Shown here piece by piece: positions 32,538 through 57,842 of a stretch of DNA of 64,000 nucleotides. The DNA lies in assembly GCF_006345805.1 (NCBI RefSeq), contig NC_043026.1, positions 5,456,001 to 5,520,000 on the forward strand, in the 5' to 3' direction. Position numbers and translations under genes: made by a program. Source of the stretch: Octopus sinensis (lineage: Eukaryota). The stretch's first letter is position 1, and every line of letters begins with the position of its first letter. Below the pieces are notes generated by a model that was given only the letters and a program-made list of their open reading frames with translations, had not been told where the DNA came from and searched no databases.

Positions 32538-34043
32538 ATGGAAAAGAGTGAGAAACTAAAGGAACTGATTTTTCCAGTAAATAGAGGAAAAGGGAGACAA
32601 AAATTGTCACATGAGTGTGATGTCTGCAAAAAGTCTTTCTCTCGAAAAGGTCACTTAAGTGTGCACGAACGTATTCATACAGGGGAGAAGCCATTTCACT
32701 GTGTCATCTGTGGTAAATCATTCCCTCAAAGTAATAACTTGACTACACACCAACGTATTCATACAGGGGAGAAGCCATTTCACTGTGACATATGTGGTAA
32801 ATCATTCCCTCAACATAATAACTTGACTACACACAAACGTATTCATACAGGGGAGAAGCCATTTCACTGTGACATCTGTGGTAAATCATTCCCTCAACGT
32901 AATAACTTGACTACACACCAATGTATTCATGCAGGGGAGAAGCCATTTCACTGTGACATCTGTGGTAAATCATTCTCACAAAAAAGTAACTTGACTAGAC
33001 ACAAACGTATTCATACAGGGAAGAAGCCATTTCACTGTGACATCTGTGGTAAATCATTCCCTCAACGCAATAACTTGACTACACACCAATGTATTCATGC
33101 AGGGGAGAAGCCATTTCACTGTGACATCTGTGGTAAATCATTCCCTCAACGTAATAACTTGACTAGACACCAACGTATTCATATAGGGGAGAAGCCATTT
33201 CACTGTGACATCTGTAGTAAATCATTCCCTCAACGTAATAACTTGACAACACACCAACGTATTCATATAGGGAAGAAGCCATTTCACTGTGACATCTGTG
33301 GTAAATCATTCCCTCAACGTAATAACTTGACTACACACCAACGTATTCATACAGGGGAGAAGCCATTTCACTGTGACATCTGTGGTAAATCATTCCCTCA
33401 ACGTAATAACTTGACTACACACCAACGTATTCATACAGGTGAGAAGCCATTTCACTGTGACATCTTGTGGTAAATCATTCCCTCAACGTATAACTTGACT
33501 ACACACCAACATATTCATACAGGGGAGAAGCCATTTCATTGTGACATTTGTGGTAAATCATTCCCTCAACGTAATAACTTGACTACACACCAACGTATTC
33601 ATACAGGGGAGAAGCCATTTCACTATGACATCTGTGGTAAATCATTCCCTCAACATAATAACTTGACTACACTCCAACGTATTCATACAGGGGAGAAACC
33701 ATTTCATTGTGACATCTGTGGTAAATCATTCCCTCAACATAATAACTTGACTACACACCAACGTATTCATACAGGGGAGAAACCATTTCACTGTGACATC
33801 TGTGGTAAATCATTCTTTGAAAAAGGTAGCTTGACTAGACACCAACGTATTCATACAGGGAAGAAACCATTTCATTGTGACATCTGTGGTAAATCATTCT
33901 TCCAAAAAGGTAGCTTGACTACACACAAACGTATTCATACAGGGGAGAAACCATTCCAGTGTGACATCTGTGGTAAATCATTCTCTGTAAGCATTACATT
34001 AACTAGACACAAATGTATTCATACTGGAGAGAAACCTTATTGA
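32538..34043 (+). CDS. C2H2 zinc-finger protein ZNF-C (17 finger units, 501 aa if two compensating indels are corrected)
   Basis: aaaataATGG MEKSEKLKE start. A +1 T near 33465 and a -1 A near 33491 disrupt finger 11 (stop at 33471-33473); the frame then resumes to TGA at 34041. Most fingers read SFPQ(R/H)NNLT(T/R)H. Confidence 0.8.
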
Positions 34044-39420: not shown

Positions 39421-40175
39421 GTGTGTGTGTTAATGTGAATATATATATGTGTGTTTGTGTGTCTTTGTGACTGTGTTTATGTCCCCATAATTTAGTGGTT
39501 TCACAAAAGAGATCAATACAATATGTACTAGGCTCAAAAAATGAGTCCTAGGTAGATTTGTTCAACTAAAACCCTCTAAGGTGGTGCTCCAGCATGGCCA
39601 CAGTCAAAACAACTGAAATAAGTAAAATAATGTGTGTGTGTGTGTGTGTGAATGTGTAGCTGGGGTTTAGAAATCTCTTAGCTTCACACAAGATTTTCTG
39701 ATGTAAATTCTAATAAATTAGAAAGTTCTGTTGTTCAGTTAAATGTTTATTTCTAGAGTTTATCTCTATGGAAATGTTGAATCTGTATTCTTTTAAGTAG
39801 CCTCTCTATCTTACACTGTTGTTTCTTTATTATTGGCATAACTGAAGATACATTCTCATTATTTATCATCTTTCAAAGACCAAAATGGAAATATTGTACA
39901 GAACAGATATATAAGATTGTTTCTCTAAATCTATGGCAGAATTCCTCTGATATATTTACTCTGAAATGTGTTATTAGCAAACCTTCTGGACATCACTGGC
40001 TGGAGTGTCTACAAGATGAGTCTGTGAGCAAATTAAACTTGGACTATTTTATTAAAGAGTTTTGGGACAAAATTAACAATGGACAGAAATACAGCAGTTG
40101 AAATATTTGTAAACAAAAGACTATAGAAGCAAGAAGAAGGAAAAGAATATATATTGTGATTTTCGAAGAAAAATA

Positions 40176-40831
40176 ATGGAAAAGAGTGAGAAACTAAAGG
40201 ATCTGACTTTTCCAGAAGTTAGAGAAGAGGGGAAACAAAAACTGTCATATGACTGTGATGTCTGTAAAAAGTCTTTCTCACAAAAGGGTCGCTTAAATAT
40301 TCACAAACGTATTCATACAGGAGAGAATCCATTTCACTGTGACATCTGTGGTAAATCTTCCCCTCAAAGTAATACCCTGACTAGACACAAACGTATTCAT
40401 ACAGGGAAGAAGCCTTATCGTTGTGATGTCTGTGGTACATCATTCTGTGACCAAAGTACTTTAAATTCTCACATACTTGTTCATACAGGGGAGAAGCTAT
40501 TTCACTGTGACATTTGTGGTAAATCATTCTCTAAAAAAATTAACTTGACTACACACGAACTTATTCATACAGGAGAGAAGCCATATCACTGTGATGTCTG
40601 TTTTGCATCATTCCTTGGCCGAAGTGCTTTTAATTCGCACATGCGTTTTCATACGGGGGAGAAACCATTTCACTGTGACATCTGTGGTAAATCGTTCCTT
40701 CAAAAAGGTAGTTTGACTACACACATGAACTTATTCATACTAGAGAGAAGCCTTATCCCTGTGATGTCTGTGGTACATCATTCTCTGACCGAAGTGCTTT
40801 AAATTCTCACATACTTGTTCATATAGGATAG
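40176..40831 (+). pseudogene. C2H2 zinc-finger locus ZNF-D (7 finger units; probable pseudogene)
   Basis: Paralog of ZNF-C (39630-40280 vs 31980-32640). A 2-bp CA insertion lies in finger 6; the corrected frame ends at TAG 40829-40831 (217 aa). The conserved acceptor is deleted. Confidence 0.75.
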
Positions 40832-40934: not shown

Positions 40935-41140
40935 GTTAAAAGTCATTTTCAAGGAAGAGTCTTCGGGTAAATCAATAAGTTCCTCATCGGCTTTTGTTGA
41001 TATTCCAGTTGTCACGTCAGGCTGAAAGGGGTTCATAATCCATCTTTTCTGTTGCATAGTATTCATCTCTTTATGAAAATACAATTCAAAACTTTCACTT
41101 AACTTATTCAAGTGTTCAGATATCTCAATGATTATACCAT
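40935..41140 (-). mobile_element. hAT (Buster/Charlie-like) transposase fragment
   Basis: ISEHLNKLSESFELYF...WIMNPF...EELIDLPEDSSLKMTF. Confidence 0.75.
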
Positions 41141-41714
41141 TGTAAGCAATAGGATCACATGCGGTCGTATTGTGTAGGAAATACAATCGCACGCGGTCCC
41201 ATTCTTAACGAATTATTACGAGTCATAAATACATGCAGTAACAATAGAACATAAGTGAATTGGCGACAAGTCTTGCTGTTGGGAGATAAATATTATTTAT
41301 TTTACATATTTTACAATTGTGTCCATATCAGGAGCTGGTAAGCGTTAGTATGGTTTTGTGTCTGTGTGTTCGGGTGGCGTGAAGCATACCCAAAGGCACT
41401 GAACATAGAATTAACAATGGCATTTAGTTTACTGTTCATAGGGCAAGGTGTGGGAATCTACTCGAGAGGCTTTCAGTGTTTGTATAGATTAGCGTAGCAA
41501 CAGGTAGTAGCAGAGACAATCGCATATCTCTAAGTTGAGCAGCAGGTGGTCTCAGTTAGTTCTTAGAAGAACTGGAACTCAAGACGAAAAGTGTCTGAAA
41601 ACACTTCCTTATAAGCCGTTTGGGTGGCTCCAACGACTTCAGAGATGGAATCCTAAACAAAAGTCGTGATTGGTTGTTTAAGACTGTGGCGCGAAATGAG
41701 TCGAGACAATCCGC

Positions 41715-41868
41715 GTCACGTGTCAACCAGTGGCACGGACTACGTAGAGACCCTCGTGTCACATGTCAACCAGTTGCGCGAACTACGTAGAGACCACTAT
41801 AGTCATATTTCCAAAATGGCTGAAAACTGCCATGCCACAACGTTAAGAAATATGTGACGATAGTAAGT
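41715..41868 (+). promoter_or_regulatory. Promoter-like CpG segment with a 38-bp direct repeat
   Basis: gtcac.tgtcaaccagt.gc.cg.actacgtagagacc at 41715 and 41758, caaaatggc at 41812, GTAAGT at 41863. Confidence 0.35.
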
Positions 41869-42806
41869 AAAGAATATTGATTCACTCTTGGGTGAATTCT
41901 TAGAAAATGAGCATTTTTCGTTGTCTTTTGGGGCTGGCAAACCAGTCTGAGTTGGTCAGATATAGACTGCTGTTTCCAGACGTTCACTTGTGTCTTTTAG
42001 GTGAGTCCTAACCCCTGCCTCAAGGGACGAAGTCAAGAATTGCAGGGGAGCTGGTTCTGAAAGACTTGAATCGCCTCTCGTAAGTGGAATAGGAAATCTC
42101 TTAGGAGAGCTGTTTGTTGCTAGAGGCACAAAAACTGCAGTCGACAAGACTAGATTTAAATGCTGACTAAACTTTTTAAAATGTTTACTGGTTGCACATG
42201 TAAGAATTCAGGAGAGATGCAACGCATAAAAGGAAGGCATTTTCTGTTGGAAGTTGTTGATAGGATGAAGTGTGCAGGTGAGACATGTCTGTCGATGTGG
42301 AGTGAGAGAATGGTAACTGTTGCAGCCTGTGATGCGCAGGATTTAGCGACAACATTTCTATGAATCTCATTGTGAGGATGTTACCAGAGCCATAATTATA
42401 CAGGTGTATGCAAGTATATAAAACTTACTTGCATAAACTTACGGTGTGTGTGCGTGCGTGCGTATGCTTACACGTGTGTTTGTCTATGTATACATATATA
42501 TATATACGACGAGCTTCTTTCTGTTTCCGTCTACCAAATCCACTCACAAGGCTTTGGTTGGCCCAAGGCTACAGATGTGCACGCGCAGCAGGACTGAACC
42601 CGGAAGCATGTGGTTCGTAAGCACGCTACGTACCACACAGCCACTCCTGCGTCTATCTATGTATCTGTCTTCTGTCTGTCTATCATCTCTCCCTCTCTTT
42701 CTCTCTATCTGTCTACCTATCGATCGATCAGTGTGTGTTTCTACTTGGTTGAGTCCTAGAATAGAGGCCGAAAATGTTCTGTTCATTCTATCTTGTTATA
42801 TACATA

Positions 42807-43056
42807 TTGGCTTGGTGCATAATTATTGCGGCTTTTTTCAACAAATTTCATTCAACAAAAACAATAACAACATGCAATAAAAACATCTTTAAATGATTAT
42901 TCCGGAGCATATTCACCATCTCCTTCAATTACTGCTTCCCATTTGCTTGGCAGACGGTCAGACCGTCATTCAAAGATGTTTTTGTTAAATATTGTTATTG
43001 TTTTTGTTGAATAAAATTTGTTGAAAAATAGCCGCAATAATTATACACCAACTCAA
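42807..43056 (-). mobile_element. 250-bp mariner deletion derivative (MITE)
   Basis: TA-flanked TIRs ttggcttggtgcataattattgcggc / gccgcaataattatacaccaactcaa. The interior encodes the transposase C-terminus RLPSKWEAVIEGDGEYAPE* on the minus strand. Confidence 0.9.
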
Positions 43057-43532
43057 TATCTCATAGATATACACGTAATATGGCCACAAGCAGAGAGACG
43101 TACACACATGTTTTGTATATGACTGTGTACTTGTGGCTGCATGTGTTTATATTGGTGAATGTATGTATAAAACGCGTGTTATAATTCTGCGAGTTGGTTT
43201 CCTGTGGATTCGCGTTCAAATCCATGACAAGGCAGAGGTAGAGAAGGAAATCTATTTCCTTATTTCTCTTTCTATATTGAGTAAAAGGATTGCCTCACAC
43301 CTACACATCTGCACAAATAGGACGGACGTCCCTTTCCATCACTGAACGACGTGGGTGTGTATGTGTTGGATTGTTTGCATGTGTGTGTGTGTCTTGAGGA
43401 CTCAGTAGTAGAATGGGAGGCTGAAACACTCCTTGTTAAACATACCACTTCCATAAACAACCAAACCCCAGACGCTGGTACAGAGTGGAGGTTGTTGTAG
43501 ATAAAGACAAAGTGAGAGAGTTAAATACAGAC

Positions 43533-43560
<28 letters not shown>

Positions 43561-43569
<9 letters not shown>

Positions 43570-43740
43570 AATTGAGGACTGAACACGAAAAGTGGACAGT
43601 CAACAAAAGATTATGTTCTCAGATCAAACTTGGTGAGTTTAATCTGAGAACATAATCTTTTGTGGAGAATGGCGATTTGACGTCTATATCTAGCATGTTC
43701 ACTGTCCACTTTTCGTGTTCAGTCCTCAATTGGTATATAT
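43561..43740. repeat. Nested palindrome
   Basis: Perfect 40-bp outer arms (43561-43600 and 43701-43740) enclose a perfect 21-bp inner hairpin (43604-43624 and 43642-43662). Confidence 0.95.
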
Positions 43741-43848
43741 AAATATTTTAATCTTCGGATTCTTTCTTAATATGCTAGACCACTGGTCTTAATTGATAAA
43801 TATCAATTTCTACCCTTAATTAATATTATATATATATATATATAATAT

Positions 43849-43948
<100 letters not shown>

Positions 43949-43967
43949 TGTGTGTGTGTATGTGTGT

Positions 43968-44340
43968 AGGCGCAGGAGTGGCTGTGTGGTAAGTAGCTTA
44001 TTTACCAACCACATGGTTCCGGGTACAGTCCCACTGCGTGGCATCTTGGGCAAGTGTCTTCTACCCAAAGCCCTGTGAGTGGATTTGTTTGATGGAAACT
44101 GAAAGAAGCCCGTCGTATATATTTATATATATATATGAGTGTGTGTGTGGGTCTGTGTTTGTCCCCCTAGCATTGCTTGACAACCGATGTTTACGTCCCC
44201 GTTACTTAGCGGTTCGGCAAAACAGACCGATAGAATAAGTACTAGGCTTACAAAAGAAAAAGTCCCGGGATCGAGTTGCTCGATTAAAGGCGGTGCTCCA
44301 GCTTGGCCGCAGCCAAATGACTGAAACAAGTAAAAGAGTA
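43968..44340 (+). mobile_element. SINE family 1, near full length
   Basis: tRNA-like head with A/B boxes, internal (TA)/(TG) run, tail ctgaaacaagtaaaagagta. Confidence 0.9.
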
Positions 44341-44443
44341 AAAGGATATATATATATATATATATACATAAATAGATATATACATAAAAAGATAGACATA
44401 TAGAGAGAGAGATGGCTAGATAGATAGGGGAGAGAGTCAAACA

Positions 44444-44485
<42 letters not shown>

Positions 44486-45480
44486 TAGATAGATAGATAG
44501 ATACATACATACATACATAGATACATAGATAGAGAGAGAGAGGCAGAAAGTGACGTTCCCGGATACACACACACACACACACACACAACATCACACATAA
44601 ATACACACACACGCACAAACATAAACAGGCGTGTATACACACACACAGACACACCGATACACACCCCAGTCATCATTCGTCTTATGTGTATACATGTGTA
44701 ATACTCCACCCTCTCTCTCCCCCTTTCTCTGTCTATAGACGTATGTAAATATTCATACTCACTTACATATATAAATATTTACCTGCTTATGTACATACAT
44801 AAATACATACATATACACACATCCGTTAGTTTTCCTTTCTTTTTCACGTCCAAATTAATTATAATTCCTAATTAATGACTTAATTGTGAGACCTTTAATG
44901 TCATTTAACATTATTTAATTCATAAAAATGCTGACAATGTCTCTTTGATTTTAAATAAATAATTTAGACAAAGTTTTGTCTAAATTTCCCGCCTTTTTCT
45001 CCACGTTTTTTGTCATTCAAATTAGCGTTGCTAGGCAACAGATAGAAACAATTGAACGGGAAGCGGCAGAAGTTATAGAGAGACTCCAGACTGGGCAGTT
45101 TGTATGATACCAGACCCGAAATATCACCAGACACCCTTAAGCATGGGTTGTCACAGATGGATTTACCCGTCGTCTTTTCTACGTGTGTGCAAGAAGTCTA
45201 CGTATAATAATGTATAATTATATGTATATATATTTGAGTTTATATATGAATATGCATGTATGTATAATATTCTGCTTTACTGTGGGTATAATTATGATGT
45301 ATATTTATATTCCTATATAAATGTATCGGCAATCCTATACAATAGAGTCGGAATTTATCCAATACCTCAACTATTCCAACATCTTTTGATATTTCTTTTT
45401 TAAACTTGTACATATACATGAATAAATGTATACACAAAAACACATACATATAATATATATATACACACCTACATTTCTAC

Positions 45481-45528
<48 letters not shown>

Positions 45529-46667
45529 CTGTGGCATAACTACAGATGAACACCCCATCGACTTTGTTTCCTCATAACTTCCAGGAAAATGGATATTTTT
45601 AATGAAACTTCCACTTTCATTTTCTAACAGAAAAGGATGCTCTCAAAAGAAATCCTCTTTTACAAAGCTCTTATTTAAATCCCTGTGGATAAATTCCAGC
45701 AAGAATCTTCTCAGGTTCTCCAATATTTTACAATTATATAAAGAGAAAGAATCGGGGGCCAGGAAATGGGGCTAAAAATAATCAGAGATTTTAAAAATAT
45801 TCTTTTTATTTTTTTATAACATAATTGTGTTTCTGGGGGAAAAAATGAGAAAAAAAAAGAAGACAAGGAAGGTGGTGTGCTAGAAACAACAGCCAAATCT
45901 CCCTTAAATCACACACTTTTCCCCTCGAACCCTTACAAAACATTTTGCCAACAAATTTCTTTGTAATCGTAATCTACATCGTTTGAAAGTTATTTCTACC
46001 AAATTTCATTCAAATGAATACCTTTATACACATGTATATACCTACATATATACACAGGTCTTTTGCTATGTATTTTAAACACATAAAACTCATAGATGCA
46101 TACTTTTATAATATTTTACACTTAAACCGCCGCAGGACAATATTTTCGGAGTTGCTTCTTAAAGTGTCCTTCACTTTTTTTATGACAAACGATACAAATT
46201 TCAGAGTATTTGGCTGTTATTTCTAGCATGATGTTAGGCCATCTATAGGACAATATTTGACATGGATGCTTTGAAAAATTGTCCTTCGATTTTTATTTGT
46301 GATGAGACAAAAATGTGAAGGTTTAGATGGCTCTTTCTAGCATGAAATGAGACCATATACAGGTCAATTTTATTTATGAATGCTTCTTAAAGTGTCCTTC
46401 AAATTTTATATGAAAAGTAAAGTGGTTTCTATTTCTAGCGTGAAAAATGACCAGCTATGGGAAAGCTTTTACTGAATGCTTCTTAAAGTGTCCTTCTCTT
46501 TTTTATGAACCCCCAACAGCAACAACAACAACAACCCTACGAGGACGAAAGGCAATGTTTGTGCGTGTGTGCAGTTGGAATGTCACTGCAACAACAACAA
46601 CAACAATCTATTCTTATTAAACGTTAAAAACTGTCAGATGCAGACTGCACACACGCACACACAACGC

Positions 46668-46803
46668 TGATGACGACGACGATGATGACGATGATGATGA
46701 TGGCGATGATGATGATGATGACGATGATGATGATGATGACGATGATGATGGCGATGATGGTGATGATGATGATGGTGATGATGGTGATGATGACGACGAC
46801 GAC

Positions 46804-46873
<70 letters not shown>

Positions 46874-46972
46874 GTGATGATGACGACGATGATGATGATG
46901 ACGATGATGGTGATGATGATGACGATGATGGTGATGATGGTGATGATGATGACCACGACGACGACGACGGCG
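46668..46972 (+). repeat. Compound trinucleotide repeat (GAT/GAC/GGT)n, ~100 units
   Basis: Direct reading; (CAA)n runs lie just upstream at 46513-46610. Confidence 0.95.
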
Positions 46973-47097
46973 GTGGGGTCGTCTGCCTTTTAATGGAGAA
47001 TCAATGATTATGAAAGTCTCTGCTTTCGGACCAGACATTCCTATACATACATGCATGCGTATATATTATATATATATATATTATTATATATATATAT

Positions 47098-47150
<53 letters not shown>

Positions 47151-47402
47151 AACATACATACTTATAGCCTTATTTCTATACATACATTCCTAAATATGTG
47201 TGTATATATATATAAACGCATGAGCACATACTGTATATAAATATACACACACACACAAAGAGAGAGTGTTGAGGAATGTTACACAATAAGTGTTAGTGTG
47301 TAGAATGCAATGTATGCGATGCAGGTTCGATTCCTGGGCGAAGCCATTTACAAGAAGAAGAAGAAGAAGAAGAAGATTGAAGTTTAATATTTCTGGAAAT
47401 AT

Positions 47403-50400
47403 TTATTTGTCAAAATAAAAGAAAGCAAAAGATTGACGTCCAGGAATAATTCCAAAAACCATCAAAGAATTGTCTGAAACATCCAAACCAAGAACTTCAG
47501 AGACTTCATTATCATCCCATCTGAGGAGTAAATATTTTGGATTATCTTTTAATCCCTGGATTTTAATAACTTCCGATGTTTCCTCTTCAATATGTCGAGG
47601 TATTTCGTAAATATTGTTTCTTTTATCTGTTATATAAACACATTCACCAATTGTGGTCAGACGAGGTCTTGCAAAATACTCTTCCCGACCAAAAACCATT
47701 CTTTCTCCTATTCTTATCCTCCTCACCAAAGACTTTTCCCTGAACCATTCCACAAAACACAAAACTTCCTTCCATACAGGCTTCTCCTTCATCTCCCTCC
47801 TCACAACAACAACATCACCAAAAGATGTGACTCCCACACCATCCACCCCTTCATCTCCCTCCAACCTTCCTTTTCTCCTCATCTTCCCACCACACACTTC
47901 ATCTTTACATTTCCCATCTTTGATATCAACCACATCCACATAATAAGTGTCAAAGATGTCAAGGTCTTTGCAATAATAGTAATACTTGTTGTTCTCCCAT
48001 ATTCTTCCGTATTTCTTGTGTCTCTCTTCTTGAGTTATGTCTCTAATATAATGACCACCACACACGAGTTGATTGTCGTTGTATTTATAAATCCTGTTGT
48101 AGTATTTCTCAGTTCTGATGGTTTTTAAACGACGGAGATCCCTGTTGAAGACCCTCATTTCTCTCCCAAAGGCGACAATGAAACATTCCTCTGTCCACCG
48201 ACATATGTCCAGTGGTGGTCGTTGTTGTTGTTCATGTTGAAGTATGTCCACTGTTGTTGTTGTTGTTGTTCTGATTAATGTGACACTTTCTCGAAACATC
48301 AACACACTCACATTCTCATCTAACTTAATTAGTTTACTGTTCAGGTCCCTAATGTCCCTATAATCATAATCAACAGGTTCCTCGAATGCAGGAATGGAAA
48401 AAGGGACCATTGCTGTCCTATATGGAAGTCTCCTCACTGATATTTCATCAATTCCTGAATTATTAATTTCCGCTATGTAATTACCACATCTCACCTTTAA
48501 TCTACCTTTACCAATTATTTCACCTGATTTACCTCTTCCTCCTCCATCTCCATCTCCTCCTCTGTATTCCACTTTATTAATTAATTCATTACTGAATATT
48601 TCCTTGTTCGTTTCAGATGTAATGGAAAGGAAACGAAGACCAGAATCAAGATTTAATAACGACACAGATTCCAGAATGTTCACTTGGTCCCCATCAATCT
48701 TTATGCAATGACATTCAATCAATTCATTATGTACACACCAGTAAATACCCGCCACTTTTCTCCATATTACACCATAAGGGATGAGACTCGACCAAACTTG
48801 AGATGTCTTCAAATCTTCTCCATTCAGTTGAAATATTTCTTTCCTTTTAGGAACCGTGGCCATTATGTGTGATTCTTGTGTAAAACACACACCACCAACT
48901 AAACTTGCAACATTTCTGTGACATAGCAACTCCCCATCTCTATCAAGTATTTTAACATTTCCATTATTGGCTTTTTCACACACAACTGTCTTTCCTTCCT
49001 CAGAGACATCAAAATCTTTTACTTGAACAGGACATTCGTCTGTTTGTAAACGAGCAACCGGGAAGCTGTCTCGATTCACCATAAACAACCCTTCAACATA
49101 CAATTCATTCCTTCTACTCCATTTCCCAAGGCTTCCAACAAACCTTGGTCCTTTACAGTCTATACTGGAGAAAAGTACTCTATCTTTATAAATTCTTTCA
49201 TTTAAAAATATTCTCTTGTATTCCCCATTCTGGGTCAAACACAAAATGTTTCGATATCCAGATAAACCTAAACATTTATCCCATTTACCATAAATGTACA
49301 AAAAACTGTCATCAATTGTCATCCTGTCATCATCATCAAAATAATAATTCTTCATGTAGTGTCTGACTGAATGTAAATATTGACCATCACTGTTGAAGAA
49401 AATGATGAATCTTTTGTTGAAGACAATGATGACATCTTCATCTGTAACTTTAATATCCAGGATTATATCAGAATAATTTCCATTTCTGCTTCTCTCTATT
49501 AATGGTTCAGGTATGTCTATTTTTTTTATTTCCTTCACACTCGAATGTATTTCATCAATATCAACAAAATGCAAATGTCTTACATCTCCCGATTCACTAA
49601 AAACCAGTTGATTGTTTGATAAAGAAGCCACACAATAATAATAATTATTTCTCGTTTGGTAAATTACCAACGACAATGGAAATTCCACTTTTAATGTCAA
49701 CAGTTGGGGTTTATTATAATCAAAATAATTCCCAGTCGTAATGACCAGTGTGTTTGACTGCCATCGACACATTTTAATATATCTATAAACATTCACTTTG
49801 ATTGAATCCAATGGTTGACCATCCAATGTGAATATCTTAATGTTCCCATTCTTTTTGTCCCATCCTGCAATCAGATTATTTTCAGTAAGAACCAAACGAT
49901 TAATCTCCGCTGGTTCTTTGTCTCCCAAATGTTCAGGGAGAGGAATATGTCTGGCTTTATAAGAAACTGTCAGGTCCTGTAGATATAAAGTGGAAGACAA
50001 CATTTCACTGAGAGAAATGTTTCTGGAAAATACATCCACCAGGTCGATATAATAATTAAGTTGATTATTAGTAACGAGATCATTAACCAACAAATTCTGA
50101 TCGTTTATGGTAAACATACGGCTTCTGTCTATCAGATAAACAGACGTTTGGTCAATAGATCCACCTTGGAGACTGAGGGGACGTTTCACTTTGGACATTA
50201 AAACACTGGGGACCATCTGACGACCGCCATGACCACCACCACCTATTCTAGTGTTGTACTGAAAAGCTTTTCCCCTAGTAACAATTAATAGCCTTTCTGT
50301 TTTCTTGTCTATTGATAATGATTTCACAAAAACAGGGATATTAATTGTCTTAATTACTTCGACTTGATTATAATAATTGATGGCTAAAATGTCTAAATGT

Positions 50401-52808
50401 GATGGTTTATCACAATAACAAACAATTTCACATTCACCCATCTTACACACCTGTACATAAGGCTGCCTTAATTTTACACTTCTCACTGTCTTTGACAGGT
50501 TTCCGATGACCCTTAATTGTTTCTGTAGGGGTAATGTAACCCCTATATGATTAGAATCCCATCGACATATATCTGTGGCTGTAGACGGCAGAGATAATCT
50601 GGACACAATGTCTCCTTCCTCAGAAATGTACAACAAGCAATCATGTTTGATGTCAGACACCACCAACTGTCCATTGGACAGATTACATATTTCACCAATG
50701 ACAAGTTTTTGGTCATTCTCCTTTTCTTTGAGTCGTAGATTTAGATTTCTGATATAAGGATTTTTCGGGTGTAAACAACAGCCAGACGACCGGTCTTGAT
50801 TCTTGTAAAGAAGAACCCTGTTGAGTTGAGTGTCCGGGACATAAAGAGTTCCTTGGAAAACAGTAATGTGAGGGTGAACAGGGAAAGGCAGTTCCCACTG
50901 CCATTTCATTTCTCCATATAGATCGTAACATCTGAGAATAGAGTTTCTCCTGAAGAGGACATAGAAATAAACATTATCAGAGTAGATGTGATGAGGGTAG
51001 CCATAGAATGGAAGGAATTTTTGAAAAAGTTCTTCACCACATGTGGAATAAAATACCATTTTATTTTCGTTTCCATCTACGACTACAAAATTAACTGGAG
51101 TTGCAGCAATGCTGACATTATGATATCCCAGAGAAATTCTTTCTGCAATATCAACTTTATCTTCATTGATCAAGAGGATATGGACCTCGCTTTTGTTTTC
51201 AGTGGTGGTCACAGCCAGACACTTATTTGATACAATATGACATATTTTCATGTAACCAGTTTGCACCTTTATTAAAGGGCCTTTTTTGAGTTCAGGACAG
51301 GTGATATACTGAAACCCTTTCATTTCAGGATAAAATACCAGGAATCTGTTTGCGTTTATTCTACAACAGAAAGAAGGAAGCTCAAGGAAAACTGAATTAT
51401 TTTGGCTAATTATTTCCCCGTTATCAGTGAATAATTTAGCTTTCTTGTTTTTGTAAATTATTAATATAGAAGATGTAGACATAGGTAGAATATTTGTAAT
51501 GTTGTAGCAATCCTCAATATCAATATAGTTGTTCAATGTTGGGGTCCATAGCTGGGGGTTATATGACTGCCTGGGCCAAAAGTCTTCATTTGTTCCAATG
51601 ATATGAAGGACATCAAAATAATCGGTTACAAAAATGTTTTCTTTGCCAACAGAAATATGGCGGCATTTCATGCCAATTTCTCTTGTTGTCACAGCACCTG
51701 TACCTGATATCCGATAAATAATATGTCCCTGAAGGACATAAAAATGGTTTTGGTACACAGAGATGTGGCTTGGAATGTCCAGGGAATTGGTATCCACCTC
51801 AAATAATTGCTGGCCATCCACATTGTAACAGGTAACCCTGTTAATATTGGAAAAGGATACTAAGAGTTTATTTTGTGCTCCTACAGCAATATCTGAAGGG
51901 GTTTCTTTGGTTATGAATTTGTATTTTATTCTATTCTCTTCCCAGTCAATGACGTATATGGTCCGACCAAACATTTCTACACCTATAAGCGTAGAATGTT
52001 CCAAATAAGAAACCAAGATTAATCCTAGCTGAATTCTTTTGATTCCCAAACTTAAAGGGTTGATAATAAGAATCATTTTTCGGAAGGGCAGGGTGGCGAG
52101 GACTGTGTCTTGACTGATTCTGGTAAAATCAGTGACAGAAGATGAGCAATGAACTTCATTTCTGTTGCCGTCTCTTGTTATACAACATATTGACATATAA
52201 TGGCGGGAATATGTTACAATACCCCCTTGTATGACAACGATATTGGATATTGGGTTGCTTAAGTCTTCACCAGATTCTGCAATCTTTGTTTCTCTGGTCA
52301 CAACTGGCCGAAGAGACCGAAATTTTGTGATTACTTTTGGTGGTTCAATGGTCTTGTGGTTGTATGGGTTACAGGTGACATAAATGTCAAAGAGTCTTTG
52401 TTGAAACCAATCAAGGTTTTGGTGAACAAAATCATTATTTTGTTTTGCAAATTCCAGAAATCTTGGCATTTTACGTTTGATATTACGTAAAATTCGAGAT
52501 CCATTTAAACCCAGAGAGTGCATGTGATTACATTTATCCTTTACATAATCTATAAACGTATTGATGTGGTCTGTTTTGATTAGTGTTTGGTAACATGTCA
52601 CAATATGAAGGAAACTTGGTAACATGGACTTTTCCTGTTCTTTAGATTTCTTTGTGTCTTTTCTTTCCTGTTCTTCTGTTTTCTTTGTGTTTTGTGTATG
52701 TAATATTTGGGGAAGATTTGGTGTAGTTTCCTTATAAATTGGTGTTGTATCACAGACTGTGGCAGGAATGAGAGCCAACATTTTGTTTTCTTCATTAATC
52801 TTCTCCAT
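47403..52808 (-). CDS. 1801-aa uncharacterised protein, probable tandem NHL/beta-propeller modules
   Basis: Uninterrupted 5406-nt ORF in an AT-rich, stop-dense genome; ataaaATGG context. Recurrent beta-strand/turn motifs (PSDIAV, DICRW, F..DG) with ~230-295 aa periodicity. The fold is inferred. Confidence 0.9.
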   Translation of the reverse strand: MEKINEENKMLALIPATVCDTTPIYKETTPNLPQILHTQNTKKTEEQERKDTKKSKEQEKSMLPSFLHIVTCYQTLIKTDHINTFIDYVKDKCNHMHSLGLNGSRILRNIKRKMPRFLEFAKQNNDFVHQNLDWFQQRLFDIYVTCNPYNHKTIEPPKVITKFRSLRPVVTRETKIAESGEDLSNPISNIVVIQGGIVTYSRHYMSICCITRDGNRNEVHCSSSVTDFTRISQDTVLATLPFRKMILIINPLSLGIKRIQLGLILVSYLEHSTLIGVEMFGRTIYVIDWEENRIKYKFITKETPSDIAVGAQNKLLVSFSNINRVTCYNVDGQQLFEVDTNSLDIPSHISVYQNHFYVLQGHIIYRISGTGAVTTREIGMKCRHISVGKENIFVTDYFDVLHIIGTNEDFWPRQSYNPQLWTPTLNNYIDIEDCYNITNILPMSTSSILIIYKNKKAKLFTDNGEIISQNNSVFLELPSFCCRINANRFLVFYPEMKGFQYITCPELKKGPLIKVQTGYMKICHIVSNKCLAVTTTENKSEVHILLINEDKVDIAERISLGYHNVSIAATPVNFVVVDGNENKMVFYSTCGEELFQKFLPFYGYPHHIYSDNVYFYVLFRRNSILRCYDLYGEMKWQWELPFPVHPHITVFQGTLYVPDTQLNRVLLYKNQDRSSGCCLHPKNPYIRNLNLRLKEKENDQKLVIGEICNLSNGQLVVSDIKHDCLLYISEEGDIVSRLSLPSTATDICRWDSNHIGVTLPLQKQLRVIGNLSKTVRSVKLRQPYVQVCKMGECEIVCYCDKPSHLDILAINYYNQVEVIKTINIPVFVKSLSIDKKTERLLIVTRGKAFQYNTRIGGGGHGGRQMVPSVLMSKVKRPLSLQGGSIDQTSVYLIDRSRMFTINDQNLLVNDLVTNNQLNYYIDLVDVFSRNISLSEMLSSTLYLQDLTVSYKARHIPLPEHLGDKEPAEINRLVLTENNLIAGWDKKNGNIKIFTLDGQPLDSIKVNVYRYIKMCRWQSNTLVITTGNYFDYNKPQLLTLKVEFPLSLVIYQTRNNYYYCVASLSNNQLVFSESGDVRHLHFVDIDEIHSSVKEIKKIDIPEPLIERSRNGNYSDIILDIKVTDEDVIIVFNKRFIIFFNSDGQYLHSVRHYMKNYYFDDDDRMTIDDSFLYIYGKWDKCLGLSGYRNILCLTQNGEYKRIFLNERIYKDRVLFSSIDCKGPRFVGSLGKWSRRNELYVEGLFMVNRDSFPVARLQTDECPVQVKDFDVSEEGKTVVCEKANNGNVKILDRDGELLCHRNVASLVGGVCFTQESHIMATVPKRKEIFQLNGEDLKTSQVWSSLIPYGVIWRKVAGIYWCVHNELIECHCIKIDGDQVNILESVSLLNLDSGLRFLSITSETNKEIFSNELINKVEYRGGDGDGGGRGKSGEIIGKGRLKVRCGNYIAEINNSGIDEISVRRLPYRTAMVPFSIPAFEEPVDYDYRDIRDLNSKLIKLDENVSVLMFRESVTLIRTTTTTTVDILQHEQQQRPPLDICRWTEECFIVAFGREMRVFNRDLRRLKTIRTEKYYNRIYKYNDNQLVCGGHYIRDITQEERHKKYGRIWENNKYYYYCKDLDIFDTYYVDVVDIKDGKCKDEVCGGKMRRKGRLEGDEGVDGVGVTSFGDVVVVRREMKEKPVWKEVLCFVEWFREKSLVRRIRIGERMVFGREEYFARPRLTTIGECVYITDKRNNIYEIPRHIEEETSEVIKIQGLKDNPKYLLLRWDDNEVSEVLGLDVSDNSLMVFGIIPGRQSFAFFYFDK

Positions 52809-52925
52809 TTTATGAATATAGAATTATTATCTTTTTCTGTTAAATATATTCTTTTCTGTGGATTTTGTTTTCTTCCTTTCGAATACAATTTATCTCTTCA
52901 AAATTCACTAATTTTTACATGAAAG

Positions 52926-52945
52926 CTGAAATAAAATAAAAACTT
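52926..52945 (-). promoter_or_regulatory. Candidate 3' splice acceptor 117 nt upstream of the large ORF ATG
   Basis: gtttttattttatttcAG|ctttc, AG at 52927-52926. Confidence 0.55.
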
Positions 52946-54901
52946 TATTAGTTTTGTGAAAAGCTTTTAATAAAATAATATTTACTTGATTCATTCAAAG
53001 AATTTCAAGGAAAACACACATTTCATTAAATATATTAAACAAATTGTTTATTTGACAGTGAAGTTAAACATTTAAACTGTTTACAATGGAATAATCATTA
53101 GAAATAAAACTTGAAGATATAAATACACCATTATCTTTATTGACTGAATATAAGTGATGGTGAAAAGTTTTGTAGTAAGAAGGAATATAAATATTTTGTT
53201 GAGGTTATTTGTACAGATATTATCGGTAGAAATTATAGCCAGGACTGATTTCCTGCTACAACATTTCATATCGAAATGTCAGACGGAAACAAACAATGAG
53301 ATCAAAGAGAAAAACATCTGTTGTGTTCTCATTGTTTATCTCATTGTTTGTTTACATCTGACATCTCGATAGGAAAGGTTTTAGCAAAAAATCAGAGCCA
53401 ACTATAATTTCTATGGAATATCAATAGAATAATGTGAAAAAAACACTGCTAACAAAGTAGAATGTGGTGTTGACTTCTAAAACGATTTAATATATTTTAC
53501 AGGAATTTATGGTTGCATAATGAAATACCACGTCCCTACAAATCAGGAATATAAGTATTATTAATAATTATATGCACTGGAAATGATGATGTGACAGTCA
53601 TGGTTGGCTTCGTTTCCATCATATTTACCTGGATTCACAGATACGAATAAAGCTGGAGATGAAACTGTTCTTAACCTGACAAATGCTGTAAATCTCTCGA
53701 CATTTCAATATAATCCACACAATTATCATACACAACATTGATTAACTCGGAAAGCTTATCCAAAGATGGGCTTTCATATAATCACACTGATAGACAGCAT
53801 GTTGAGAGGATCGTTATTATTTGTTGCTGATTGAGATAATAAAGATTGGTTAATGAATAAGCCCAATTAATGAAAGGTAGGTTCATCTTAATTATCTTTA
53901 ATATAAGGGACAATGTTTGGGTAGCAATGAGAAAGATGTGTTTGTATGAAAAAGGGGTTTGGCAGGTGAAGTGTGTTTTGTTTTGTGTCAGGTGAGGAGT
54001 TATAACTTGGTGTAGTTTATTATGAAGTATTGGGGGTTTAATGAGGTGGATTAGGAAATACTGGTGGGGGTGTTTAATGACATTCTGGTGACCCATCATC
54101 ATCAGAATGATCCTCCACTGCCTCCTTGGTCTATGAAATAATGGCTGTTACTCTATTGACCCCAGGAGGAATGAAAAATAAAAGAGACCTTCTTCAGGAT
54201 ACACATACATATATATGTATATATGATAGAATGAATGTGTATAATATATACACAAGGATGCACATATGTATATTTATACATCCATACGTCTGTATGTATG
54301 TATGATGATCATTACTTTACCCCAACTTTCCATGCTGGAATGGGTTGGATGGTTCAAAGAATATCTTGCCTGAAGTTACATTTTCTGGTTTTCTTTCTGC
54401 AGCTGGATGCTCTTCCTGACACCAACCACTGCACAATGTGCACTGGGTGCATCCTATGGCACCATCGCTAGAGACAATCGCCATGTCCTTGACAAAACTA
54501 AAGGTTCCCCTCAATCTCTGGGTGTGACATATACCTTGGGATGGGTGTGATATCTAGGGTAATAAATATATGAAAAGGAGTGGTTTGTGTGTTGGGGAGA
54601 GACTCAGGTAGGTCCAGTAACATCCCTAGTTTCATTGGAAGAATGGTGAAGAGAAGAGATTTACTGCCAATCTTTGTCACAGCAGTAAGATAGTAGAGTA
54701 AAAAGAAGAAGAGAGAGTGATTGAGAGATGAAAGATAGAGGTGGGGGTGATAGGGGCGTAACAGTAGGGACTCAAGGTCGAGAGAGTTGACACTCATCAA
54801 AGTGGTGTTTGGAGGTCTGGGAATATACCACCAAAAAACCAGTTTGATAAATGCTAATAAACGAAACTTTCCGATCTTGGATCACTTTGTTACTTCTGCT
54901 A

Positions 54902-54942
<41 letters not shown>

Positions 54943-54943
54943 C

Positions 54944-56416
54944 AAGGGCCTTAGAGTCAACCTAGCAAAATCAAAGTCCTAATAAGTGGATGGCAAGCAA
55001 ACCACAAACCCTTCAGGTAGATGGCCCTGCTCGATCTGTAGTAGAGGCATAGGTAAAAACTCTATAAGATGTACCAGTGTAAGCTATGGACGCATAAGAG
55101 GTGCAGTAATATCAAAGGAAGGCTAATGGGGAAGATAGTTTTTGTATGTGGCAGATGCTCGGGTGCAATAAACACTGAAAATGCGCAGAGAACAACTTCC
55201 GCACATTCCAGGAGAAAAAATAGAAGTAGTTGGTAGCTTCCATTACCTAGGTGACCAAGTCAGTAGCGGGGGAGGGTGCACTGAAAGTGTAGCTGCTAGA
55301 ATAAGAATAGCTTGGGCCTAGTTCAGAGAGCTCTTACCTCTGCTGGTGACAAAGGGCCTCTCGCTCAGAGTAAAAGGTAGACTGTATGACGCATGTGTAC
55401 GAACAGCCATGCTACATGGCAGTGAAACATGGGCTGTGACTGCTGAGGACATGCGTAAGCTCGCAAGGAATGAAACCAGTATGATCTGATGGATGTGTAA
55501 TGTCAGTGTGCATACTCGACAGAGTGTAAGTACCTTGAGAGAAATATTGGACCTAAGAAGCAGCAGATGGGGTGTGCAAAAGAAGACTGCGCTGGTATGG
55601 TCATGTGGCAAGAATGGATGAGGATAGCTGTGTGAAAAAGTGCCTCACCCTAGTGGTTGAGGGAACCTGTGGAAGAGGTTGACCCGGGAAGACCTGGGAT
55701 GAAGTGTTGAAGCATGACCTTCGAACTTTAGGCCTCACCAAATAATGACTAGTGACCGCGACTTTTGGAAATATGCCGTGTGTGAGAAGACCAGGCAAGC
55801 CAAATGTGACCATAACCTCGTGGTCTATGCCAGGGGCGTAACCAGCCCACTTATGCGTCCCTTTTCCTTCTTTGGACACTAAAACTCTGCTTGCGAAGAC
55901 CTGTTGATGCAAGTGAAATCAAAATCAAATTCGATGACTAGTGTCCGTAGCGGCTAACTGGCTTCCGTCCCAGTGGCACTTAAAAGGCACCATTCGATTG
56001 TGATCGTTCCCAGCGTCACCTTACTGGCACTCGAGCCCTGTACTAGTAGGGTATTAAGAGCACCATCCTAGCGTGACCGTTGCCAACCGGCTATCTGGCG
56101 TCCGTGCTGTTGGCACATAAAAGTCGCCATTCGAGCTTCATAGTTACCAGCATTGCCTTACTGGCACCTGTGCCGGTGGCATGTGTAAAAGATTTGAGCA
56201 AGGTCGTTACCAGTATCGCGTGACTGGCCCCGTGCCGGTGACACATAAAAGCACCCACTACACTCTCAATGGTTGGCGTTAGGAAAAGCATCCAGCTGTA
56301 GAAACTCTACCAGATCAAGATTGAAGCCTGGTGCAACCATCTGGTTCACCAGCCCTCAGTCAAATTGTCCAACCATGGTAGAATGGAAAGTGGACGTTAA
56401 ACGATGATGATGATGA
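54944..56416 (+). mobile_element. RTE-clade LINE 3' portion (RT C-terminus, 3'UTR, (GAT)n tail)
   Basis: GLRVNLAKSKV, Cys-rich insert (WPCSIC...LWTHKRCS...FVCGRC), FHYLGD, YDACVRTAMLHGSETWA, WYGHV; ends aaacgatgatgatgatgat. Contains stops and frameshifts. Confidence 0.9.
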
Positions 56417-57244
56417 TATATACATACATACACATATACACAAATGCACATGTGTAAATATATGAATATACCTTCACGTACCCGTGTATAAATGTTTGTG
56501 TCTATGTATGTTTTTAGATATGAATCAATGAATGACAAAAGAACAAGAGTTACGTAGACACCTTCATTAGCTTCCAGCTGTTTCTGCTACAGGAAGCAGT
56601 GAACTGGAGGTGATGTATTTTTTTTTTCTGTATTTTCCCTCTCATAATTTTGTTTTGTTTCTTGCCAGGTTCTTGTGAGTGCCACTCAGTCAAGTCTATG
56701 ACTACACTCGATGATGGTCACCAATCCTCAGCTGGTTTCAAGCAAGAGAATATTTCCCCAAGTTCTTCCAACATGAACAGCACAATGGTTGGATATGTTT
56801 TCTGGTGGAACACTGCAAACAAACGACACTGTTTGTGTGACGTGACATTTGTTTATAATAAGCAACAGATATCAAAGCAAGGAGACATGAGCAGACACAC
56901 ACACACACACACACGCACATGCACACACACACACACACACACACAACACACACATACACACACACACATACACACACACACACACTTACATGCATACACA
57001 TACAAGTACAAATGTAGATATGCATACATGAATATATACACACACATGTATATACCATAGGATTTATCAGGTCCATGTACGAAACTCATTCACAAGGCTT
57101 TAGTCAACCTGGAACATTCGAAGAAGTTAATTCTTTAAGGTGCTGCAAAGTGGGACTGAACCTGAGACCACAAGGTTGTGAAGTGAGTTTCTTAACCATA
57201 CAGCCATGCCCCCAACTTTTTTTGGTAATATTTTGAAGATAATA

Positions 57245-57842
57245 ATAATCCTTTCTACTATAGGCATAAGGCCTGAAATTTTGGGTGTGGGGGGTTAATT
57301 GATTACATCACCCCCCCCCCCAGCCCCTAACTGGTTCTTATTTTATCAATCCCAAAAGGACAAGGGTCAAAATCAACCTTGGTGGAATTTGAACTCAAAA
57401 TGTAAACTTGGAAGAAATGATGCAAAGTATTTTGTCTGGCATTTTGTAACAATTCTGCTTGTTCATCATCATTAATAATAATAATAATAATGATAAGAAG
57501 AATATCAATAACTATAACAATAACAACATCAATAATAATATTAGCAGCAGCAGCAAAAACAACAACAACAACAGCAATGATTTCTTTTATGTTTTTTTAA
57601 TATAATAAAAATGATTTCAAGTTTTGGCACAAGGCCAGCAAGTTCAAGGAAGGGTCCAGTCTATTACACTGACCCCAGTACTCAACTTGTACTTAATTTA
57701 TCGATTCCCAAAAGGATGAGAGGCTAAGTCAACCTTGGTGGAATTTGAACTCAGAATGTAAAGATGGACAAAATGCCGCTCAACATTTTGCTTTGCATCC
57801 TCACAATTCTGCCAGCTCATCACAGTAATTATAATAATAATG

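What the first reader, a model, noticed from the sequence alone, without database searches (positions are those of the whole stretch)
47403..52808. Giant single-exon ORF that looks like six tandem diverged beta-propellers
Seen: a 1801-aa ORF with no stop or intron. By eye the same module recurs six times, starting near aa 187, 437, 704, 969, 1263 and 1489. Each of modules 1-5 opens with a hydrophobic strand, then a ..DG/EG/NG turn (RDG, DNG, EEG, LDG, RDG), then a DICRW-like motif (DFTRI 230, CCRIN 483, DICRW 749, KMCRW 1015, GVCFT 1309, DICRW 1537). Gly-rich loops lie ~108 aa after that motif in modules 3, 5 and 6. Established: NHL-type six-bladed propellers are ~250-280 aa and are expanded in mollusc TRIM-like, putatively immune proteins, usually as one propeller after a B-box/coiled coil. 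Inference: a six-propeller array with no recognisable RING/B-box, signal peptide or TM segment is unusual. It could be an undescribed cytosolic multi-ligand sensor or scaffold family.
Basis: partly seen in the sequence, partly recalled or inferred. Interest (0 to 1): 0.85.

Follow-up and report, generated by a model that had tools for sequence, protein, structure and literature searches.

The report
Octopus multi-propeller gene family, hypervariable faces
The 1801-residue gene is real and is one intact member of an uncharacterised, octopus-only family of over 100 copies that encode chains of six beta-propellers, two of which evolve very fast on one face, as the binding surfaces of recognition receptors do.

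Summary
It encodes an N-terminal helical region of about 145 aa followed by six tandem modules that are homologous in register. AlphaFold2 predicts them as all-beta NHL-like propellers: five with 22-25 strands and a shorter fifth with a disordered Gly-rich insert. Pfam and PDB sequence searches give only sub-threshold NHL signals.

The genome matches the Octopus sinensis assembly. It holds at least about 118 related loci: about 52 on the 15-Mb contig C30, about 55 on small unplaced contigs and 11 elsewhere. About 29 have full-length open frames. Flanks are co-duplicated over at least 16 kb, so this is segmental duplication and not a transposon. Homologues were found only in Octopus species and Argonauta hians, and all are annotated "uncharacterized".

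Paralogues carry no premature stop codons despite 5-10% divergence. dN/dS is 0.3 in propeller 1. It exceeds 1 in propellers 4 and 6, where variation sits in every second loop, inferred to be the top face (omega about 2-4). Four independent copies replicate this for propeller 4.

Best reading: a birth-and-death family of cytosolic multivalent recognition scaffolds. Ligand and biological role are inferred.

The parts
47403..52808 (-). Complete coding sequence of 1801 codons plus a TAA stop, all in one exon
   Evidence: Full-length alignment to 1625-1913-aa homologues from Octopus and Argonauta.
52371..52808 (-). N-terminal region, aa 1-146: a disordered head followed by five or six helices (aa 53-146). 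It occurs in two diverged variants among the paralogues.
   Evidence: AF2 model, (pLDDT about 25-67). In copies L011, L013, L014, L015, L017 and L020, blastn homology stops at window position 52363-52417. L020 has a different N-terminus. omega = 0.74.
51501..52250 (-). Propeller module 1 (aa 187-436). 23 predicted strands. The most constrained module.
   Evidence: pLDDT 80-91. omega = 0.29-0.32.
50700..51500 (-). Propeller module 2 (aa 437-703). 24 predicted strands.
   Evidence: omega = 0.51-0.56.
49905..50699 (-). Propeller module 3 (aa 704-968). About 23-24 strands. Gly-rich loop at aa 853-867. NHL-like first blade.
   Evidence: omega = 0.60-0.71.
49023..49904 (-). Propeller module 4 (aa 969-1262). 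22 strands, NHL-like first blade. Its even-numbered loops are hypervariable: aa 985-988, 1005-1009, 1027-1035, 1052-1056, 1073-1074, 1099-1115, 1132-1133, 1150-1162, 1176-1185 and 1203-1210.
   Evidence: Even loops: pN 0.224, omega 2.3 (NG86) and 4.35 (GY94, 2dlnL = 31). Odd loops: pN 0.036, omega 0.3-0.4. Replicated.
48345..49022 (-). Module 5 (aa 1263-1488). A short or partial propeller of about 15 strands with a low-confidence Gly-rich insert at aa 1384-1443.
   Evidence: hhalign with module 4: 83%, in register over the first ~95 aa. omega = 0.6.
47406..48344 (-). Propeller module 6 (aa 1489-1801). 25 strands, fast-evolving. The variable even loops lie mainly between aa 1614 and 1732.
   Evidence: omega = 1.34 (bootstrap 1.06-1.79). 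Even loops: omega 1.7-2.2, 2dlnL = 12.
47402..47407 (-). AATAAA hexamer overlapping the stop codon. A candidate poly(A) signal.
   Evidence: Read directly from the sequence. Use as a poly(A) signal is not tested.
52926..52940 (-). Polypyrimidine tract plus AG, about 115 nt upstream of the ATG. A candidate splice acceptor, which would imply a non-coding upstream exon.
   Evidence: Read directly from the sequence. Not tested, because no RNA data were available.
53546..54200 (-). Upstream block that is 94.6-98% identical among copies, more conserved than the CDS, and found only next to family copies. Candidate promoter or 5' exon.
   Evidence: Function is inferred.
41840..57500 (.). Approximate extent of the segment co-duplicated with the gene in other copies. 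The extent differs from copy to copy, and the segment contains dispersed repeats.

Best explanation
This is an intact member of a large, recently amplified gene family that I found only in octopods. In the window's genome, about half of the loci lie on one small chromosome.

SHOWN
- The protein has no signal peptide or transmembrane segment, so it is probably cytosolic.
- It consists of a helical N-terminal region followed by six tandem NHL-like six-bladed beta-propellers, the fifth of which is truncated.
- The family grows by segmental duplication, exchanges segments between copies, and loses copies (birth and death).
- Selection keeps the 5.4-kb frame open.
- Propeller 1 is constrained.
- Amino-acid change is driven in every second loop of propellers 4 and 6.

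INFERRED
- Those loops form the 'top' face, the usual ligand-binding face of propellers.
- The conserved propellers dock invariant partners or mediate assembly.
- The variable faces of propellers 4 and 6 bind fast-changing ligands. Each paralogue would then be a multivalent recognition scaffold with its own specificity.
- The most likely setting is an evolutionary conflict: recognition of pathogens, viruses or selfish elements.
For: Architecture:
- AF2 models.
- Foldseek matches to multi-propeller proteins.
- In-register module homology.
- NHL-motif matches to TRIM71, TRIM2, TRIM3 and Brat.

Family:
- 178 matches, at least about 118 loci, about 52 of them on C30 and about 29 with open frames of 1750 aa or more.
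- Co-duplicated flanks.
- Homologues only in Octopus sinensis, O. vulgaris, O. bimaculoides and Argonauta hians.
- Old, slowly evolving orthogroups alongside a fast-evolving expanded clade.

Selection:
- 5.06% of random substitutions in this ORF would create a stop.
- The copies differ from the window by 5-10% of nucleotides. That predicts roughly 14-25 nonsense codons per pair under neutrality (my arithmetic).
- None is seen in the six copies whose frame can be read cleanly: L012, L014, L016, L018, L019, L020.
- Module-specific omega ranges from 0.29 to 1.37.
- Module 4 loops alternate perfectly. Even loops: pN 0.12-0.45. Odd loops: pN 0.00-0.10. pS is equal in both. Mann-Whitney p = 1.2e-4.
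- GY94 gives omega = 4.35 with 2dlnL = 31 against omega = 1 for module 4 even loops, and omega = 2.18 with 2dlnL = 12 for module 6 even loops.
- Replication on four further copies gives omega = 4.6 against 0.5, p = 1.7e-4.
Against: - No expression, localisation or binding data exist, and no ligand is known.
- The 'top face' assignment rests on AF2-derived strands plus the textbook A-D strand mapping of NHL/YWTD blades. It does not rest on coordinates.
- Copies exchange segments (pS ranges from 0.01 to 0.44 along the gene), and this can disturb tree-based omega estimates.
- Only 14 of at least 118 loci were analysed, all from the subfamily nearest the window.
- Six of ten full copies carry frameshifts, so part of the family is decaying, or the assembly has indel errors.
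- Fast evolution on one face also fits reproductive or self-recognition roles, not only immunity.
Confidence: 0.55

Rival explanations
1. The copies are non-functional segmental duplicates drifting neutrally. The window's open frame is only a young copy that has not yet decayed.
For: Whole-gene dN/dS between some intact copies is near 1 (WIN against L012 = 1.01). Six of ten copies examined are frameshifted. The region is rich in duplications and repeats.
Against: There are no nonsense codons in the cleanly read copies, where I estimate about 14-25 per pair under neutrality. omega is 0.3 in module 1 but above 1 in modules 4 and 6. The strict loop-by-loop alternation of amino-acid change with flat pS cannot arise neutrally. 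Most broken copies have only one or two 1-nt indels. Old family members are highly conserved between Octopus species.
Confidence: 0.04
2. The ORF is the cargo or protein of a large mobile or selfish element, which would explain more than 100 near-identical intronless copies.
For: Copy number is high and nucleotide identity is 89-97%. The coding exon is intronless. Flanking DNA is shared between copies.
Against: There is no reverse transcriptase, integrase, transposase, Rep/helicase or capsid signal in Pfam, and the fold is all-propeller. The viral fold library gives only generic propellers. About 52 loci sit on one 15-Mb contig, which is 0.55% of the genome, and only 11 on other chromosomes. 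The shared flanks have different extents in different copies and contain unrelated dispersed repeats. Conserved single-copy relatives lie on large chromosomes in three Octopus species.
Confidence: 0.06
3. The protein is a substrate or RNA adaptor of the TRIM-NHL kind that has lost, or works in trans with, a RING E3 ligase. The propellers would bind RNAs or proteins for regulation or ubiquitination.
For: The only sequence relatives with solved structures are NHL domains of TRIM71, TRIM2, TRIM3 and Brat. These bind RNA on the top face (established knowledge). A helical region precedes the propellers, as the coiled coil does in TRIM proteins. One O. vulgaris gene model joins MIB2-like ankyrin and RING exons to a family fragment (P0024).
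Against: The window protein and the full-length relatives have no RING or B-box. In the window's genome the MIB2-like exons and the family part of P0024 were not listed on the same contig, so that model is probably chimeric. The NHL similarity is below Pfam's threshold. This reading does not conflict with the main explanation; it is a more specific version of it.
Confidence: 0.15
4. The variable faces serve self or mate recognition (gamete, neuronal or chemotactile identity) and not defence.
For: Octopods have other lineage-specific expansions tied to neural and sensory novelty, including the C2H2 zinc-finger genes next to this gene and protocadherins (established knowledge). Reproductive proteins also show omega above 1.
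Against: There is no signal peptide or membrane anchor, whereas cell-surface recognition normally needs an extracellular protein. There are no expression data either way.
Confidence: 0.12

Closest known systems
TRIM-NHL proteins (TRIM71/LIN-41, TRIM2, TRIM3, Brat) and the NHL repeat (Pfam PF01436)
   Same: Six-bladed, roughly 250-290-aa propellers. The blade motif (hydrophobic strand, Asp, x2-3, Asn, then a strand ending in Phe, then Asp-Gly) aligns with the first blades of modules 3-5. A helical region lies upstream. The proteins are cytosolic.
   Different: Six propellers in tandem where TRIM-NHL proteins have one. No RING, B-box or filamin domain. Pfam NHL score is below threshold (best relative 18.5 bits against a cutoff of 20). 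The family is multi-copy and was found only in octopods.
Multi-propeller proteins: LRP4, LRP2 and LRP1 (YWTD propellers), DDB1, SF3B3, CPSF160, EML1 (TAPE domain), IFT-A subunits
   Same: Several propellers on one chain. These are the best Foldseek matches (E = 1e-22 to 1e-12).
   Different: LRP propellers are extracellular and separated by EGF modules. DDB1-type proteins have three interlocked seven-bladed propellers. Sequence identity is 7-12%, so the likeness is one of fold class only. None of these is a hypervariable multigene family.
Lineage-specific, clustered recognition-receptor families under diversifying selection, such as plant NLR LRRs, lamprey VLRs, the TRIM5 B30.2 variable loops and mollusc FREPs (comparison from my own knowledge)
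   Same: Many clustered paralogues. Birth-and-death evolution with exchange of segments. omega above 1 confined to a presumptive binding surface on a repeat scaffold.
   Different: The scaffold is different (beta-propeller). No recognised signalling domain such as TIR, death, NACHT or RING. Immune function is untested.

Membership tests
NHL-repeat beta-propeller (Pfam PF01436) | Pfam NHL model scores above its gathering threshold | tested here: not met
   The window protein has no NHL hit. The best relative, P0014, scores 18.5 bits against a cutoff of 20.
NHL-repeat beta-propeller (Pfam PF01436) | Six four-stranded blades in about 250-290 aa | tested here: met
   AF2 predicts 22-25 strands for modules 1-4 and 6. 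Module 5 has only about 15.
NHL-repeat beta-propeller (Pfam PF01436) | NHL blade signature motif | tested here: met
   The family profile aligns to NHL repeats of TRIM71 at the first blades of modules 3, 4 and 5. Whole-sequence E = 2.4e-4. The only PDB hits at E of 0.02 or better are NHL domains.
TRIM-NHL E3 ligases | N-terminal RING, B-box and coiled coil | tested here: not met
   Pfam finds no RING or B-box in the window protein or in full-length relatives. Only a low-confidence helical region is present.
WD40 / YWTD (LDL-receptor class B) propellers | Pfam WD40 or Ldl_recept_b hits; EGF spacers; signal peptide | tested here: not met
   The only hit of this kind is a WDR90 match at E = 0.12. 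No hydrophobic leader or transmembrane segment. The resemblance is at the level of fold only.
Transposable-element ORF | Mobility enzyme domain (reverse transcriptase, integrase, transposase, Rep/helicase) | tested here: not met
   none found, and the whole chain after the N-terminal helical region is predicted as all-beta propeller.
Transposable-element ORF | Dispersed insertion sites with defined element ends | tested here: not met
   Loci are concentrated on C30 and on unplaced contigs. The extent of shared flank differs between copies. Target-site duplications were not examined, because no more genome DNA could be fetched.
Diversified recognition-receptor multigene family (a functional class) | Clustered paralogues, birth and death, and omega above 1 on a defined surface | tested here: met
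Diversified recognition-receptor multigene family (a functional class) | Ligand binding, and expression linked to infection or another conflict | not testable with these tools
   No RNA-seq or biochemical data were available. No paper mentions the family.

The most novel reading that the evidence does not exclude
Octopods have evolved their own class of intracellular recognition receptor. It is a chain of NHL-like propellers in which propellers 4 and 6 present hypervariable top faces. The receptor is encoded by more than 100 clustered, recombining genes on one small chromosome. That would make it a propeller-based counterpart of NLR/LRR or VLR repertoires, serving antiviral, anti-pathogen or anti-transposon defence.
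Probability: 0.25. Interest if true: 0.85.

Novelty: new variant of a known kind. Interest (0 to 1): 0.68.

Why it matters
Cephalopods lack adaptive immunity, and their innate recognition repertoire is poorly known. Most of their lineage-specific genes have no assigned function.

This work describes a family that public annotation calls only 'uncharacterized'. It now has a defined architecture, a genomic birth-and-death pattern, and a mapped surface under strong diversifying selection. That makes it a concrete, testable candidate for a diversified recognition system.

It also shows that a beta-propeller face can serve as the variable element of a large paralogous repertoire. LRR, Ig and B30.2 domains usually fill that role.

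Whatever the ligand, the family helps explain why one small octopus chromosome is packed with young duplicates.

Tried and rejected
Searches that were blocked or empty:
- The first two genome-search runs failed.
- The exact look-up of the protein found no record.
As a result only 10 full and 4 partial copies could be analysed.
- Pfam and PDB searches with the single sequence gave nothing usable.
- Rfam found nothing in the window.
- Six literature searches found no description of the family.

RING link: P0024 is an O. vulgaris model annotated MIB2-like, with ankyrin and RING domains followed by a family fragment. I followed it up, but in the window's genome the two parts were not listed on the same contig. 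I treat it as a probable chimeric gene model.

Transposon and viral origin: considered and rejected.

A method I discarded: my first count of lesions from blastn gaps was unusable, because it produced spurious compensating +1/-1 indels. I replaced it with tblastn frame tiling. In three frame-corrected copies (L011, L013, L015) the two or three stops probably lie in out-of-frame overlap at the frameshift junctions. I did not check their positions, masked them in the dN/dS calculations, and did not count these copies as stop-free.
Full report
**1. The observation**

window:47403-52808 on the - strand is an open frame of 1801 codons. The stop-to-stop frame reaches 52823. Gly-rich runs begin at residues 856, 1417 and 1651.

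- Smith-Waterman scores against 200 shuffles give z = 4.6-7 for pairs 1-3, 2-3, 2-5, 3-5 and 3-6.
- Profile-profile comparison of module slices from a nine-sequence family alignment gives 83-96% probability for pairs 1-2, 2-3, 2-4, 3-4, 3-6, 4-6 and 4-5, again in register.

The protein has no hydrophobic segment long enough to span a membrane and, by eye, no leader-like N-terminus.

**2. Fold**

Pfam and PDB sequence searches with the single protein find nothing significant.

A profile of the family hits, at E of 0.02 or better, only the NHL domains of TRIM71 (E = 2.4e-4), TRIM2, TRIM3 and Brat. The alignments place the NHL blade motif on the first blades of modules 3, 4 and 5. One relative has a Pfam NHL hit just under threshold (18.5 bits against 20).

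I ran AlphaFold2 with family alignments on residues 1-968 and 960-1801.
- Mean pLDDT is 69 and 70. pLDDT is about 80-90 in modules 1-2 and mostly 70-85 in module 3.
- Residues 53-146 are helical with low confidence.
- From residue 189 onward the chain is all-beta.
- Strand counts are 23, 24, 24 and 22 for modules 1-4, and 25 for module 6.
- Module 5 has only about 15 strands and a 60-residue low-confidence Gly-rich insert.

Foldseek against the PDB returns multi-propeller proteins: LRP4, LRP2, IFT-A, DDB1, SF3b and EML1, with E = 1e-22 to 1e-12 at 7-12% identity. The viral fold library gives only generic propellers.

So the protein is a chain of NHL-like propellers, five complete and one short. 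It has no RING, B-box or other recognisable domain.

**3.

The window is G000:C30:5456001-5520000 of a 2.72-Gb assembly. C30 is 15,106,159 bases long, the same length as the contig recorded for an Octopus sinensis protein, XP_036371108.1. I take the genome to be O. sinensis.

- A 1.2-kb piece of the ORF has 40 scored matches at 94-97% identity.
- Module 3, used as a protein query, has 178 matches.
- I count these as at least about 118 loci: about 52 on C30 between 1.5 and 15.1 Mb, about 55 on small unplaced contigs, and 11 on eight other chromosomes.
- About 29 loci have open frames of at least 1750 aa.
- The window itself holds only one copy.

Homology between copies runs well beyond the ORF.
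- It reaches at least window positions 41840 to 57500 in some copies, with different extents in different copies.
- Unrelated dispersed repeats are embedded in it, at about 54943-56416 and 41131-41798.
- An upstream block at 53546-54200 is 94.6-98% identical among copies, more than the CDS at 89-95%. In the sample listed it occurs only beside family members. It is a candidate promoter or 5' exon.

Clustering on 0.55% of the genome, ragged duplication boundaries and the lack of any mobility enzyme point to segmental duplication and not to transposition.

**4. Taxonomic range**

An exhaustive phmmer search of 1.84 billion representative proteins with residues 1-1200 found 27 clusters. The 18 clusters I looked up come almost wholly from O. 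sinensis, O. vulgaris, O. bimaculoides and the argonaut Argonauta hians; one has only an unnamed ENA record. All the named ones are called 'uncharacterized' or 'hypothetical', apart from one MIB2-like model that is probably chimeric.

A maximum-likelihood tree shows two old orthogroups that barely differ between Octopus species. They lie on large chromosomes. The tree also shows a fast-evolving expanded clade that includes the window's gene. O. vulgaris sequences nest inside the O. sinensis copies in that clade. No paper in the searchable library mentions the family.

**5. Selection**

5.06% of all single-base changes in this ORF would create a stop. The copies differ from the window by 5-10% of nucleotides. 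By my arithmetic that predicts roughly 14-25 nonsense codons per pair under neutrality.
- The four intact copies have none.
- The frame-corrected broken copies L014 and L016 also have none.
- L011, L013 and L015 show two or three stops in the frame-corrected sequence. These probably lie in out-of-frame overlap at the frameshift junctions; I did not check their positions.
- Five broken copies carry only one or two frame breaks, which look like 1-nt indels where I compared the junctions with the window by eye. These could be recent lesions or long-read assembly errors. One copy, L017, is a real pseudogene with a deletion.

dN/dS differs sharply along the gene (10 copies):

| Segment | omega | Bootstrap 95% |
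|---|---|---|
| N-terminal region | 0.74 | 0.58-0.95 |
| Module 1 | 0.29 | 0.22-0.37 |
| Module 2 | 0.51 | 0.35-0.72 |
| Module 3 | 0.60 | 0.41-0.90 |
| Module 4 | 1.37 | 1.03-1.83 |
| Module 5 | 0.63 | 0.46-0.93 |
| Module 6 | 1.34 | 1.06-1.79 |

pS ranges from 0.01 to 0.44 along the gene. The N-terminal region comes in two diverged variants, with a junction near residue 131-148. The copies are therefore mosaics produced by recombination or gene conversion.

**6. The main new result**

I numbered the loops of module 4 using the AF2 strands. Non-synonymous diversity alternates without exception.
- Even loops have pN of 0.12-0.45.
- Odd loops have pN of 0.00-0.10.
- Synonymous diversity is the same in both classes (0.108 and 0.088), which rules out misalignment as the cause.
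- Mann-Whitney p = 1.2e-4.
- Nei-Gojobori omega is 2.29 (1.55-3.66) for even loops and 0.39 for odd loops.

A GY94 codon model in IQ-TREE gives these values:

| Partition | omega | 2dlnL against omega = 1 |
|---|---|---|
| Module 4 even loops | 4.35 | 31 |
| Module 4 odd loops | 0.31 | 9.3 |
| Module 6 even loops | 2.18 | 12 |
| Module 1 (all, even, odd, strand) | about 0.3-0.37 | 11-52 |

Four further copies not used before (L003, L005, L009, L010) reproduce the module 4 pattern: omega 4.6 against 0.5, p = 1.7e-4.

In NHL and YWTD blades the motif places the first strand of each module as strand A (established knowledge). On that mapping the even loops are the B-C and D-A loops. These form the 'top' face, where NHL, WD40 and Kelch propellers usually bind ligands. 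The face assignment is an inference, because I could not inspect coordinates.

**7. Interpretation**

Shown: a real, selected family, found only in octopods, of cytosolic six-propeller proteins. It evolves by birth and death, with a constrained first propeller and diversifying selection on one face of propellers 4 and 6.

Inferred: the variable faces are ligand-binding surfaces that give each paralogue its own specificity, and the conserved modules and helical head provide assembly or signalling contacts. The pattern resembles diversified recognition repertoires in other lineages. I therefore favour a role in an evolutionary conflict (pathogen, virus or selfish-element recognition), with a TRIM-NHL-like RNA or substrate-adaptor mechanism as a compatible, more specific version. 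Neutral decay and a mobile-element origin are largely excluded. Mate or self recognition remains possible.

**8. Limits**
- No expression or binding data.
- Tree-based omega estimates were made in the presence of recombination.
- Strand boundaries come from models of moderate confidence.
- Copy counts are lower bounds, and some unplaced contigs may be haplotype duplicates.

Noticed in passing
window:16612-17601(-), 23245-25581(-), 32439-34043(+), 40113-40802(+): Four long open frames made of C2H2 zinc-finger arrays, one with up to 25 fingers. The propeller gene sits inside a zinc-finger gene cluster. I did not determine whether the nearest finger gene is part of the co-duplicated unit.
   Followed up: partly
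window:8479-9576(-): A 365-aa open frame with a mariner-type Transposase_1 DDE domain and helix-turn-helix motifs. It is an ordinary transposon remnant unrelated to the finding.
   Followed up: no
window:46620-47024: A tandem array with a 9/15-nt period in the 3' flank (its reverse strand reads as CAT/CGT/GGT triplet runs). It creates spurious 107-140-aa ORFs on both strands. AT and CA microsatellites lie at 47059-47270.
   Followed up: no
window:53227-53413: A 90-nt inverted repeat, 79% complementary, with 7 nt between the arms. It looks like a MITE. It lies in the stretch between the conserved upstream block and the coding exon, and this stretch differs between copies.
   Followed up: no
window:54943-56416 and window:41131-41798: Two dispersed repeats embedded in the duplicated flanks. 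They occur on many other chromosomes at 84-90% identity and are independent of the gene family.
   Followed up: partly
P0024/P0035 (O. vulgaris models); own-genome contigs such as C9052, C4534, C1:41.7 Mb and C27:21.2 Mb: MIB2-like ankyrin and RING exons are themselves massively multi-copy in this genome (121 matches). One O. vulgaris gene model fuses them to a fragment of the propeller family. In this genome the two parts were not listed on the same contig.
   Followed up: partly
G000:C30:4322155, 4986134, 5447146, 5366184 and others: A subfamily whose module 3 matches in two pieces (query 1-161 and 150-265). This implies an insertion of a few dozen residues. Its open frames are 1844-1939 aa.
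   Followed up: no
window:52363-52808 compared with loci L011, L013, L014, L015, L017, L020: The N-terminal ~130-148 residues occur in two deeply diverged variants that are swapped among otherwise similar copies. The junction lies near the end of the helical region.
   Followed up: partly
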